64,000 nucleotides of DNA from Saccostrea echinata (taxonomy: Eukaryota), in the NCBI RefSeq assembly GCF_033153115.1, contig NW_026889779.1, positions 9,796,001 to 9,860,000 on the forward strand. Direction: 5' to 3'. Positions 2,737 through 30,285 of this stretch are shown piece by piece. Under the pieces are notes generated by a model. That model saw only the letters and a list, made by a program, of their open reading frames with translations, ran no database searches and was not told the DNA's origin. How positions within the stretch are numbered: the stretch's first letter is position 1; every line of letters begins with the position of its first letter. A program made the position numbers and the translations under genes.

Positions 2737-5700
2737 ATACCTCTGTCGTGTTTTACCATCTCCCAATGAACACATTGATTGGAAGGACCTCTGTTAATCC
2801 ATCGGGACTTGATGCCAACATCGATGGTTCTAATGGACTTCCGAAGAGCGTCAAGGGGGCCATGGGAAACGCCATCCGGATCCGTGGGAGACGAGAGTGG
2901 CTCCAGGTCAGCGGACCCGGACATAGACACGAATGTTTTGGAGATCTCGAGAAATGTCACAAAGGTAGGGAATATCGCAAAAGACTGATAAGTTTCCTCA
3001 TTATCCAATATACATGTATGTGTCTGATGCTAACTGTATTCAAACCAGGAAACTTTCCAACATACAGGAACAAAATAATATCTCACTACTTTAAATTCAA
3101 CTAAACTCTTCAAACTGTAATTCAAAATACAACGGTAATTCAAATGATTTTCATTTATTTAGGAGGTTAAGTGAAAGATCAGTATTTCTGCTGTTCTTTA
3201 GATTATTTTGGTTCCTTTTCTGTAGGATACACCATAGGGCTTTGGGTCAAATTTAACAACATTGGGGATACTGAAGGCATATATCTGTCCAATGGTGGTC
3301 ACAGTTCAAATTCTCATGGCATCGCAATGATGTACAAACTTGGAGAACTGGGGTTCGTGTTCCGAACCAAGTCTGGACTTTACTGGAACGTTAAATATGA
3401 TAACTTACTGGAAGACAAGTGGTACCACGTGACAGTCACATGGACCAATGCAAAGGGAGTTAAGCTTTACATCAACGGGGACCTTGTTAGCGAGACAAAG
3501 ACGCCAGAACAGAGGTACATATACAATATATAAGAAAATCTCTACATGAATGTTCCCTCATCTCTAATTCATTTCTTTCCCATTACATGTATTTCTTCTC
3601 TTTAATTTCAGTTATGCTGATGGTTATTTATTTCAATGTCACTATAAATGATTTTTTTAGGTTAGCAATAGCGAGGAAGCCCCGTTTTAACGAGTTTCTG
3701 ATCGGCCGGAGTAACGATAGGACTGGACTTGATTCACTGGGGACAATCACTGTGGATGAGTTGAAGTTCTGGTCCGAATACAAGGACGAGTTTCAAGTTC
3801 CCGAAATTGGTGAGAGAGAAAAAATGCTTCCGAGAAGAATCTCTTTCGAAAACTCATCTTTTAAATTTCATACATATACTGTAAATGAATACAATAAAAC
3901 GTTTCACAATGATCTTTGTAGGTCCCATGTACCGATATTATTTAGACATGGATGAAATCGTTGGAAGAGAACTGGTTGCCAAAAATATTTTTTCTGAAGT
4001 TTTGGGCAATGTGCAAACTGTGGAAGGCAAAATAGGAAATGCCCTGAAATTTAACAAGGACGGAGGAAATGTTGATCTAGGGGACTTCAGCACTTCTTGT
4101 CTAGGTAACCCGGACCTCTGTCTCCATGGATTCCTGATCTCGTTCTGGGTCAAATTAGATGAGTTGCGAAATCATTCCTACTATTTCTCCAGTCATGGAA
4201 TTGATATCTACTCAGTTGGAAAAAATCTATATGCCACTGTACAGGCCGGTAATCGGAAGTGGGAAGCTCGGACGTACGGCTTAGAAATGGGTATCTGGCA
4301 GTATGTAGAAGTGACATGGAGCGAGTCTAAAGGTTTGTCTATCTACATAGACCTACGTCTAGCTGTTAAACAAGCTGGGCATTCAATAGAGTCGCCAAGT
4401 AAAAGTACTGATTCTACATTTTACATTGGTCGTGCAAATTATGCTAATCAGCAAGAATACCCTTATGCTCTTATTGATGACGTGGAAATGCTTTATGGAG
4501 AGAGGGAAATCTTGTTGTACTTGGATCTAATACAGAGAGGTAAGAGAGATAACTCTAATGCTAGTATGAGTGTAAGTTATTGAATATTTCTAGCATAATT
4601 ATTTTGAGTTACCTTCCTTGCTTCTCTTAATTTTAGATAAGCCAACGAAAAATTACTTCAGCTTCGACAGTGCGATAGGAGATCAAATTTATCATCCGTC
4701 CATGGTGATCGAAACATATGGATCACCGAAACTTGTAGCAGGTAAAATCGGACAGGGTATCAAACTAAATGGAAATCGCCAGGTTGTAGACTTTGGAGAG
4801 CACCAAACAAGCTGCTTGGGTAATCTGGACAATTGTCATCACGGGGTCCTTATGGCCATGTGGTTTAATCCCACAACATTCCGGGACAACATGTACTTTG
4901 GTTCTACAGGAAAGAACGGCATTACGATCAGCAACACTGGAAATCGTGTGGAAGTGACTGCAGCAACCTCTACCCGCGAATGGAACGTCTCCACTGAGGT
5001 TTTGTCATACGACAACTGGTATTTCTTAGAAGTGTCATGGGATCCAGAGAAAGGTCTGGAACTTTATATCAATGACATCCTGGTATCCAGCAACGACAAT
5101 CCAAAGAAACGAGCCGTTACGCTGGCAACTGGAATTTACGCCAGCTCCCAGGAGAATAAGTTTTATCTCGGAAGGGGAAACACCAGGATGACATCTAACA
5201 GTTTTGGCAACGCCATGTATGATGAGTTGGAGTACTGGTATGGTCCAAGGGATTATCTCATAGCCTTTGGTTTTATACAAAGAGGTAAGATATAACACAT
5301 TCCTAATGGTTTCGTACCATTTAAATTTGTTTTTGTGACCGTAAATATATTTCATTTTAAATGTTTTGATAGGCAAACCCAAGGGATACTTAATTGACAT
5401 GGAGGCTAAAAGAGGGGATGATCTTGTCCATCAGGATCTTCCCCTTCGTTTGTATGGTGATCCTCAGCTGGTGCAAGGTGTGATCGGGTATGCTTTACAT
5501 CTCGACGGCAACAACCAATACTTAGACGTAGGATCTCACGAAGATGAATGTCTTGGAAATCTACAAAAGTGCTCTAATGGAATAACCGTATCAGCCTGGA
5601 TGAATTTCAAAGATTATACAGAAAATATGTACATTCTGTCCACTGGTAATAACGGGATCCGTATGTATCAGAAAGGGGGAGAGACGTTCGCTGTGGTTCA

Positions 5701-30285: not shown

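What the first reader, a model, noticed from the sequence alone, without database searches (positions are those of the whole stretch)
2737..30285. Neurexin-type adhesion ectodomain fused through a TM helix to a cytoplasmic WD40 propeller: candidate novel receptor class
Seen: an unbroken phase-compatible exon chain runs from the LNS/EGF exons through a TM helix and about 280 aa of Gly/Ser/Thr/Tyr-rich linker into WD40 exons that end in the only terminal stop. Established: neurexins and CASPRs have short cytoplasmic tails ending in a PDZ-binding motif and no folded intracellular domain; WD40 propellers are usually parts of soluble proteins. The C-terminus here (IRRTVTT) is not a canonical PDZ ligand. 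Inference: an adhesion or sensory receptor carrying its own scaffold in cis on a long disordered tether. I do not know a characterised protein with this architecture.
Basis: partly seen in the sequence, partly recalled or inferred. Interest (0 to 1): 0.9.

Follow-up and report, generated by a model that had tools for sequence, protein, structure and literature searches.

The report
Oyster PHRED-1-type LamG–WD40 receptor gene
The exons really do encode one large oyster membrane protein with a neurexin-like outer part and a WD40 propeller inside the cell, but this design was already described in 2017 as the planarian muscle protein PHRED-1, so this is a new member of that family and not a new receptor class.

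Summary
On the + strand, LamG_3, LamG/EGF, stalk, TM, low-complexity and WD40 exons form one open, phase-compatible chain. The last ten exons (24135-30285) all have AG/GT sites and give 818 codons with a single terminal stop.

The fusion is not an artefact.
- The chain aligns end to end with NCBI models from Saccostrea cucullata (96% identity) and Ostrea edulis (92.6%).
- The same LamG + TM + C-terminal WD40 design occurs in more than 20 molluscs, an annelid and many flatworms.
- The WD40 tree follows the species tree.
- An intron-less Ruditapes contig joins the linker exon directly to the WD40 exons.

The novelty claim fails. Adler and Sánchez Alvarado (2017, bioRxiv 10.1101/131789) described PHRED-1, a lophotrochozoan-restricted LamG/EGF-TM-WD40 protein. 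It has cDNA and 5'-RACE support and a muscle RNAi phenotype.

- The gene starts 12 kb upstream of the window with a signal peptide.
- The mollusc and annelid forms carry six N-terminal LamG_3 modules.
- The tail is predicted to be a complete eight-bladed propeller.
- The linker holds conserved motifs.
- A 30-nt alternative micro-exon lies at 27160-27189.

The parts
2736..9337 (+). Exons for six tandem LamG_3 (ConA/pentraxin-like) modules. tblastn HSP bounds to the S. cucullata orthologue are 2736-2966, 3225-3515, 3659-3811, 3903-4544, 4636-5316, 5372-6028, 7369-7989 and 8279-9337.
   Evidence: Pfam Laminin_G_3, E 1e-10 to 1e-14. Colinear HSPs of 88-100% identity to P0170 residues 244-1624.
15188..24532 (+). 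Exons for the neurexin-like LNS (Laminin G) domains and the EGF-like modules between them. HSP bounds are 15188-15457, 17229-17393, 17501-17704, 17940-18590, 18692-19207, 19940-20047, 20143-20976, 21054-21542, 22179-22289, 22381-23145, 23237-24236 (several exons) and 24412-24532.
   Evidence: Pfam Laminin_G_2/G_1, up to E 3e-23. PDB sequence search of 22372-23217: best hit is neurexin-1-alpha at E 6e-51, against laminin and agrin at about 1e-14. Colinear with P0170 residues 1623-3116.
24619..25026 (+). Extracellular Pro/Gly-rich stalk (exon 24619-24725 and most of exon 24875-25054).
   Evidence: Read directly, with AG/GT sites and phases 2 and 1. 92-94% identical to P0170.
25027..25204 (+). 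Single transmembrane helix split by an intron (25027-25054 and 25149-25189), followed by the juxtamembrane RLKPG (25190-25204).
   Evidence: Top Kyte-Doolittle window, 1.57. The motif RAGA..G..LG..A..S..WA...KPG is conserved in Ruditapes, Owenia, Ylistrum and Aplysia and in the 29-sequence alignment.
25205..26691 (+). Cytoplasmic Gly/Ser/Thr/Tyr-rich tether (rest of exon 25149-25586, then exon 26405-26691). It carries conserved islands (DSATLRATGT, ADYD, NY..NTL, Y.YQ).
   Evidence: Composition, conservation across 28 orthologues, no Pfam family.
27160..27189 (+). Alternative 30-nt micro-exon, phase 0/0, encoding TASLHQKRYL.
   Evidence: AG acceptor and GTAAGT donor. 10/10 identical to residues 3457-3466 of S. 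cucullata isoform X2, and absent from O. edulis isoform X7.
28038..30285 (+). Four exons (28038-28232, 28436-28591, 28745-29368, 30037-30285). They encode the end of the tether and, from about 28137, a complete WD40 beta-propeller, ending in the stop TAG at 30283-30285.
   Evidence: Pfam WD40 and propeller families. Single copy in the animal's own genome. AlphaFold2 model of the clam orthologue has residues 77-442 mostly at pLDDT >90. Best PDB folds are eight-bladed propellers: ODA16, Tako8, Fbw7, Rsa4.

Best explanation
This is the 3' four-fifths of a single gene of about 42 kb, the oyster orthologue of the lophotrochozoan PHRED-1 family.

Shown: the predicted product is about 3,860 aa. It has a signal peptide, one LamG, an EGF-like stretch, six LamG_3 modules, about eight neurexin-like LNS domains with EGF modules between them, a Pro/Gly stalk, one TM helix, a G/S/T/Y-rich tether of about 260-270 aa with conserved short motifs, and a C-terminal WD40 propeller predicted to have eight blades. 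The signal peptide and single TM make it type I, so the propeller is cytoplasmic.

Inferred mechanism: the LamG/EGF ectodomain binds matrix or cell-surface ligands. The propeller, held near the membrane on a flexible tether, acts as a built-in docking platform for cytoplasmic partners. By analogy with planarian PHRED-1 this would occur in muscle cells, where PHRED-1 knockdown disorganises and thickens muscle fibres. Ligands, cytoplasmic partners and the tissue of expression in oysters are not shown.
For: Ten 3' exons with AG/GT sites form one ORF with a single stop.

The joined model, built only inside scripts, aligns over residues 1-818 with S. cucullata LOC134275752 X2 (96.1%) and O. edulis LOC125678424 X7 (92.6%). 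Exon-by-exon tblastn gives contiguous residue numbering across both disputed junctions.

Fused LamG + WD40 proteins were found in Ruditapes, Mercenaria, Mya, Solemya, Mytilus, scallops, nine gastropods, Owenia, cestodes, trematodes and Macrostomum.

The WD40 tree mirrors the species tree with starred support.

P0162 is a 1477-bp Logan contig encoding 449 aa. It is identical to the Ruditapes model on both sides of the linker|WD40 junction. It also runs through the position where clam genomic fragments P0156, P0157 and P0161 diverge into intron after GHTDEV, so it is a spliced sequence.

The signal peptide lies in upstream exon 1. The TM segment is conserved.

PHRED-1 paper: a 3-kb cDNA clone holds LamG, EGF, TM and WD40 together; the transcript is 8 kb by 5'-RACE; a band of >270 kD is seen on western blot; expression is in muscle; there is an RNAi phenotype; homologues occur only in Lophotrochozoa.
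Against: The orthologue models are computational.

The Schmidtea PHRED-1 sequence itself was not in the searched collections. The link to PHRED-1 therefore runs through flatworm homologues (43% identity in the propeller) and through the paper's own definition of the family.

The TM hydropathy is moderate (1.57) because the helix is rich in Gly and Ala.

The function is extrapolated from one planarian RNAi study.
Confidence: 0.88

Rival explanations
1. Two adjacent genes: a LamG/EGF receptor ending after exon 25149-25586 or 26405-26691, and an independent WD40 gene starting at the ATG at 28056. On this reading the annotation pipelines fused them by read-through.
For: Exon 28038-28232 contains an in-frame ATG ATG at 28056. 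An in-frame TAG lies two codons past the donor at 25586. Phase compatibility at a single junction has a one-in-three chance.
Against: The same fusion appears in three phyla with vertical inheritance. A spliced clam contig crosses the junction. A conserved phase-0 micro-exon sits inside the supposed intergenic gap. The Met positions are not conserved in Ruditapes. There is no stand-alone paralogue in the animal's own genome. A planarian cDNA clone holds LamG, TM and WD40 together.
Confidence: 0.04
2. One gene, but with major WD40-less or ectodomain-less isoforms that carry the main function. Examples are a short tail by intron retention after 25586, or a short form from an internal promoter, by analogy with alpha- and beta-neurexins.
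For: Stop codon two codons into the intron after 25586. An alternative micro-exon. A Ruditapes model with an extra cytoplasmic stretch of about 600 aa that is skipped in the RNA contig. The Aplysia model of 1764 aa starts with its own signal peptide and only five LamG domains.
Against: No isoform data for this genome. All full-length orthologue models keep the propeller, and the propeller is the most conserved part of the protein.
Confidence: 0.3
3. It is the oyster's bona fide neurexin, a presynaptic organiser, that happens to have gained a WD40 tail.
For: The membrane-proximal LNS exon matches neurexin-1-alpha far better than laminin or agrin (E 6e-51 against about 1e-14). Automatic names such as 'neurexin-1' for Aplysia and 'Neurexin-1a' for Mizuhopecten.
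Against: The domain plan differs from neurexin's six LNS + three EGF: there are six LamG_3 modules plus about nine LamG. There is no short tail and no PDZ ligand. Planarian PHRED-1 is expressed in muscle, and its authors call it a divergent neurexin-1 homologue and a distinct family.
Confidence: 0.05

Closest known systems
PHRED-1 (Pharynx regeneration defective-1), Schmidtea mediterranea; Adler & Sanchez Alvarado 2017, bioRxiv 10.1101/131789
   Same: Signal peptide, LamG + EGF ectodomain, single TM and intracellular C-terminal WD40 repeats. The C-terminal WD40 sequence is strongly conserved. The family is restricted to Lophotrochozoa, with mollusc and annelid homologues already listed by the authors.
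   Different: The oyster protein is about 1,300 aa longer. It carries six N-terminal LamG_3 modules and about nine LamG domains with few EGFs, whereas PHRED-1 has 6 LamG + 9 EGF. Flatworm relatives have teneurin-like EGF arrays. The paper reports 3 WD40 repeats by SMART; here the whole region of about 366 aa models as a closed eight-bladed propeller. No function has been tested in any mollusc.
Neurexin-1-alpha (vertebrate; PDB 3qcw, 3r05, 3poy)
   Same: The LNS-EGF-LNS arrangement, the best sequence match of the membrane-proximal LNS (E 6e-51), a stalk next to the membrane, and a single TM.
   Different: Neurexins have 6 LNS + 3 EGF and a tail of about 55 aa ending in a PDZ ligand (own knowledge). 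This protein has extra LamG_3 modules, a tether of about 260 aa and a propeller, with no conserved C-terminal motif.
CASPR / Neurexin IV / axotactin group
   Same: Large LamG/EGF type I adhesion proteins of invertebrates with neurexin-like LNS domains.
   Different: Those proteins have discoidin and fibrinogen-like domains and short 4.1/PDZ-binding tails (own knowledge). Neither discoidin, FBG nor a short tail is present here.
SCAP and Sec12 (membrane proteins with cytosolic beta-propellers)
   Same: A WD40-type propeller held at a membrane by a TM segment of the same polypeptide (own knowledge).
   Different: SCAP is polytopic and Sec12 is type II. Both are ER proteins without an adhesion ectodomain, and no sequence relationship beyond the generic WD40 fold was seen (one search lists neither among the top folds).

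Membership tests
PHRED-1 family (LamG/EGF-TM-WD40, Lophotrochozoa) | N-terminal signal sequence | tested here: met
   Exon 1 at L003:8044 begins MGAMSGLSIGILCICVVVNCVRG. It is 94% identical to residues 1-247 of the S. cucullata orthologue. Orthologues also start with hydrophobic leaders. No dedicated signal-peptide predictor was available.
PHRED-1 family (LamG/EGF-TM-WD40, Lophotrochozoa) | Extracellular Laminin G and EGF domains | tested here: met
   Pfam Laminin_G_1/2 and Laminin_G_3 on the exons. Cys-rich EGF-like exons at 18665-18958, 20955-21215 and 23228-23368 were seen by eye but fall below Pfam thresholds. The orthologue P0170 has 8 LamG_2 and 5 LamG_3 stretches.
PHRED-1 family (LamG/EGF-TM-WD40, Lophotrochozoa) | Single predicted transmembrane region between the ectodomain and the WD40 part | tested here: met
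   There is one dominant hydrophobic window in the last 818 aa (KD 1.57), conserved across orthologues. This rests on hydropathy only; no TMHMM-type tool was available.
PHRED-1 family (LamG/EGF-TM-WD40, Lophotrochozoa) | Intracellular C-terminal WD40 repeats with a strongly conserved primary sequence | tested here: met
   Pfam WD40. 43% identity over the whole propeller to the cestode P0193 and 70% to clams. 54 invariant columns in the 29-sequence alignment. The tree is congruent with the species tree.
PHRED-1 family (LamG/EGF-TM-WD40, Lophotrochozoa) | Reciprocal best hit with Schmidtea mediterranea PHRED-1 (dd_Smed_v6_4789_0_1) | not testable with these tools
   The Schmidtea sequence did not appear in either homology search and cannot be fetched here. 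The link is through flatworm homologues from genera or species the paper names (Schistosoma, Clonorchis sinensis).
PHRED-1 family (LamG/EGF-TM-WD40, Lophotrochozoa) | Expression in muscle and a role in muscle-fibre organisation | not tested
Neurexin (canonical) | Six LNS + three EGF in LNS-EGF-LNS cassettes | tested here: not met
   There are about nine LamG plus six LamG_3 modules, although individual LNS domains are most similar to those of neurexin-1-alpha.
Neurexin (canonical) | Short cytoplasmic tail ending in a PDZ-binding motif | tested here: not met
   The tail is about 630 aa with a propeller. It ends in RRTVTT, and the C-termini are not conserved among orthologues.

The most novel reading that the evidence does not exclude
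The mollusc and annelid branch of the PHRED-1 family may be a distinct sub-architecture. It has six pentraxin-like LamG_3 modules added to the ectodomain. Its cytoplasmic part may be a regulated module: a complete eight-bladed propeller on a conserved tether whose short motifs (DSATLRATGT, ADYD, NY..NTL), juxtamembrane KPG/Cys motif and alternative 10-aa micro-exon tune partner binding. If so, it could work outside muscle as well and link matrix recognition directly to a cytoskeletal or signalling complex not yet known.
Probability: 0.3. Interest if true: 0.45.

Novelty: new member of a known kind. Interest (0 to 1): 0.25.

Why it matters
This settles a high-scored lead. The fused adhesion-receptor/propeller gene is real and ancient, shared by flatworms, annelids and molluscs, but it is not a new class because PHRED-1 defined it in 2017. 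The family is still almost unstudied: there is one RNAi study, no ligand, no cytoplasmic partner and no structure. The details added here give concrete handles for anyone who wants to work out what a receptor gains from carrying its own WD40 platform. Those details are a full eight-bladed propeller, a conserved TM and juxtamembrane motif, linker motifs, a micro-exon, the LamG_3 extension in molluscs and annelids, and a scallop-specific duplication.

Tried and rejected

I looked for a stand-alone or second WD40 paralogue in the animal's own genome. Only the locus itself and one weak repeat-level hit (E 6e-4) were found.

I looked for a second paralogue downstream in the window, as scallops have. 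There is none beyond 30.3 kb.

The representative search returned mostly bacterial multi-repeat WD40 proteins, which score high by summed repeats. I treated these as non-orthologous and took only single-stretch, full-length matches as orthologues.

The LamG_3 modules weakly match the lectin-like domain of clostridial NTNH and 'Toxin_R_bind_N'. I read this as generic ConA-like jelly-roll similarity, not a toxin relationship.

The joined spliced model was never sent to any database or remote tool. All database searches used single exons by reference or database proteins.

The third homologous-protein search, complex prediction and the ESM Atlas were not used. None of them would have changed the verdict.
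Full report
**1. What is in the sequence**

The window is AT-rich metazoan DNA with no N runs. It is G000:C30:9796001-9860000 of a 923-Mb assembly.

Pfam scans of single exons by reference give three blocks on the + strand:
- Laminin_G_3 at about 3.1-8.0 kb.
- Laminin_G_1/2 at about 17.2-23.2 kb.
- WD40/beta-propeller families at 28733-29524 and 30046-30282.

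The exons at 24.9-26.9 kb hit no family and are low-complexity.

**2. The disputed 3' chain**

Reading the DNA and checking it in a script gives these exons: 24135-24236, 24412-24532, 24619-24725, 24875-25054, 25149-25586, 26405-26691, 28038-28232, 28436-28591, 28745-29368 and 30037-30285.

- All have AG acceptors, and all internal ones have GT donors.
- Joined, they give 818 codons with only the terminal TAG.
- The best hydrophobic window is AGAAMGTLLGTMAFLASLMWAFW followed by RLKPG. It is split by the 25054/25149 intron.
- After it come 259 aa rich in G, T, S, A and Y, and then the WD40 region of about 374 aa ending ...KIRRTVTT.

**3. Is the fusion real?**

The WD40 exon was searched against 1.8 billion representative proteins. 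Apart from bacterial multi-repeat proteins, the single-stretch full-length matches were long proteins with the match at their C-terminus. These were Aplysia XP_012941838.1 (1764 aa), Ylistrum XP_060080039.1 (2626 aa), Owenia CAH1790210.1 (3736 aa) and, in the cluster of P0016, Ruditapes XP_060587717.1 (3853 aa). The first three were scanned and carry Laminin G domains N-terminally and WD40 C-terminally; Owenia also has six LamG_3. The Ruditapes sequence was read in full and aligns colinearly with the window's LamG, TM and WD40 exons.

A region-restricted search added many more fused proteins:
- Bivalves: Mercenaria, Mya, Solemya, Mytilus, Ostrea, Saccostrea and four scallops.
- Gastropods: nine species.
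- Flatworms: cestodes, trematodes and Macrostomum.

The 818-aa model was built only inside scripts. It aligns over its whole length with S. cucullata LOC134275752 X2 (96.1%, residues 3043-3873) and O. edulis LOC125678424 X7 (92.6%). The window therefore comes from an oyster close to Saccostrea.

Exon-by-exon tblastn of the S. cucullata protein gives contiguous residue numbers across every junction and covers all 3873 residues.

Ten residues between the linker exon and the first WD40 exon map to a perfect 30-nt micro-exon at 27160-27189, with AG and GTAAGT sites. O. edulis X7 skips it. A conserved coding micro-exon inside the supposed gap argues strongly against two genes.

P0162 is a 1477-bp Logan contig encoding 449 aa. 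It is identical to the Ruditapes protein on both sides of NYQ|VQN. It also runs straight through the position where clam genomic fragments diverge into intron after GHTDEV. It is therefore a spliced sequence joining the tether to the propeller, and it skips a stretch of about 600 aa that is present in the Gnomon model.

The WD40 exon is single-copy in the animal's own genome.

A maximum-likelihood tree of the propeller separates flatworms, Owenia and molluscs with full support. It places the window with Saccostrea and Ostrea (99% identity over 366 columns to S. cucullata). The 2.6-kaa scallop proteins are a scallop-specific duplication. The fusion therefore predates the split of these phyla.

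**4. Topology and anatomy**

The gene starts outside the window. Exon 1 (L003:8044-8784, that is C30:9784044-9784784, about 12 kb upstream) encodes a hydrophobic leader, a LamG domain and an EGF-like stretch. It is 94% identical to residues 1-247 of the S. cucullata protein. With a signal peptide and one TM segment, the tether and propeller are cytoplasmic.

Features conserved across 28 orthologues:
- The TM and juxtamembrane motif, consensus G.RAGA..GTILG.LA..SSL.WA..RCKPG.C.C.
- Islands in the tether: DSATLR.TGT, ADYD, NY..NTL and Y.Y.VQ.
- The propeller itself.

The extreme C-terminus is not conserved, so a PDZ ligand is unlikely.

An AlphaFold2 model of the clam C-terminal 449 aa, made with the 29-sequence alignment, gives a disordered region (residues 1-76) followed by a confident all-beta domain (residues 77-442, mostly pLDDT >90). 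Its best PDB matches are eight-bladed propellers: ODA16, Tako8, Fbw7, Rsa4 and TBLR1, with TM 0.56-0.61. Seven-bladed propellers score about 0.46.

The membrane-proximal LNS exon matches neurexin-1-alpha at E 6e-51, far better than laminin or agrin. The LamG_3 modules show only generic ConA-like similarity.

**5. Comparison with what is known**

A full-text search found Adler & Sanchez Alvarado 2017 (bioRxiv 10.1101/131789). They describe PHRED-1 of Schmidtea mediterranea as a predicted transmembrane protein with signal sequence, 6 LamG + 9 EGF outside and WD40 repeats inside. Their evidence and conclusions:
- A 3-kb cDNA clone already holds LamG, EGF, TM and WD40 together.
- 5'-RACE gives an 8-kb transcript encoding 2536 aa.
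- An antibody detects a band of >270 kD.
- The gene is expressed in muscle and induced by wounding.
- RNAi disorganises muscle fibres and disturbs pharynx and gut regeneration.
- This domain combination occurs only in lophotrochozoans (Schistosoma, Lottia, Octopus, Capitella).
- The C-terminal WD40 region is strongly conserved.
- No homologue had been studied.

Later papers cite PHRED-1 only in planarian contexts.

The oyster gene meets every sequence-level criterion of this family. The one test I could not run is a direct reciprocal hit with the Schmidtea sequence, which was not in the searched collections. The flatworm relative from Clonorchis has the PHRED-1-like plan of 6 LamG + EGF arrays + WD40.

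**6. Verdict**

The claim of a novel receptor class is not: this is a new, unstudied member of the PHRED-1 family.

The most likely mechanism is an adhesion or matrix receptor, probably of muscle, that carries its own cytoplasmic docking propeller on a flexible tether with conserved motifs. This is inferred from the architecture and from the planarian phenotype.

- the LamG_3 extension in molluscs and annelids;
- the complete eight-bladed propeller;
- the conserved TM and tether motifs;
- the alternative micro-exon;
- the upstream first exon;
- the vertical inheritance of the fusion.

**7. Limits**

The joined spliced protein was not submitted to any search, fold or remote tool. Only single exons by reference and database proteins were.

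TM and signal-peptide calls rest on hydropathy and conservation, not on dedicated predictors.

Noticed in passing
window 27160-27189 (+): A 30-nt phase-0 micro-exon (TASLHQKRYL) with AG and GTAAGT sites sits in the intron between the tether and the first WD40 exon. It is identical to S. cucullata isoform X2 and is skipped in O. edulis X7. It is probably alternatively spliced.
   Followed up: yes
L003:8044-8784 (G000:C30:9784044-9784784), about 12 kb upstream of the window: This is the true first coding exon of the gene (signal peptide, LamG, EGF-like). Intron 1 is about 14 kb.
   Followed up: partly
window 25587-25592: An in-frame TAG lies two codons beyond the donor at 25586. Retention of this intron would give a receptor with a short G/S/T-rich tail and no propeller.
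   Followed up: no
window 49311-51127 (-): Consecutive ORFs look like a pogo/Tigger-type DDE transposase with an N-terminal HTH and a C-terminal Cys/His-rich finger. This was judged by eye only.
   Followed up: no
window 54166-54450 and 55251-55553 (+): The ORFs resemble the N-terminal exons of Enhancer of zeste/EZH2 ([17 protein letters not shown]..., [15 protein letters not shown]). This is probably the next gene downstream. Judged by eye from memory of EZH2 and not tested.
   Followed up: no
window 37540-38315 (-): The ORFs resemble the C-terminal tail of a non-LTR retrotransposon ORF2. Judged by eye.
   Followed up: no
window about 29610-29690; 26150-26210; about 27560-27600: A near-perfect hairpin (MITE-like inverted repeat) lies in the last intron. 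A (TA)n and a (TC)n microsatellite lie in the two introns flanking the tether exon 26405-26691.
   Followed up: no
P0153 (Ruditapes XP_060587717.1) residues about 2945-3444, against P0162: The clam Gnomon model has an extra Ser/Thr-rich cytoplasmic stretch of about 500-600 aa between the tether and the propeller. The spliced RNA contig lacks it, and no equivalent ORF exists in the oyster intron 26692-28037.
   Followed up: partly
P0030, P0180, P0181, P0182 (scallops); P0018 (Aplysia): Scallops have a second copy of about 2.6 kaa that lacks the LamG_3 array. In Ylistrum it lies on the same 392-kb contig as the long copy, and in the tree it is a scallop-specific duplication. The Aplysia model (1764 aa, auto-named neurexin-1) starts with its own signal peptide and five LamG domains, so it may be a short isoform or a truncated model.
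   Followed up: partly
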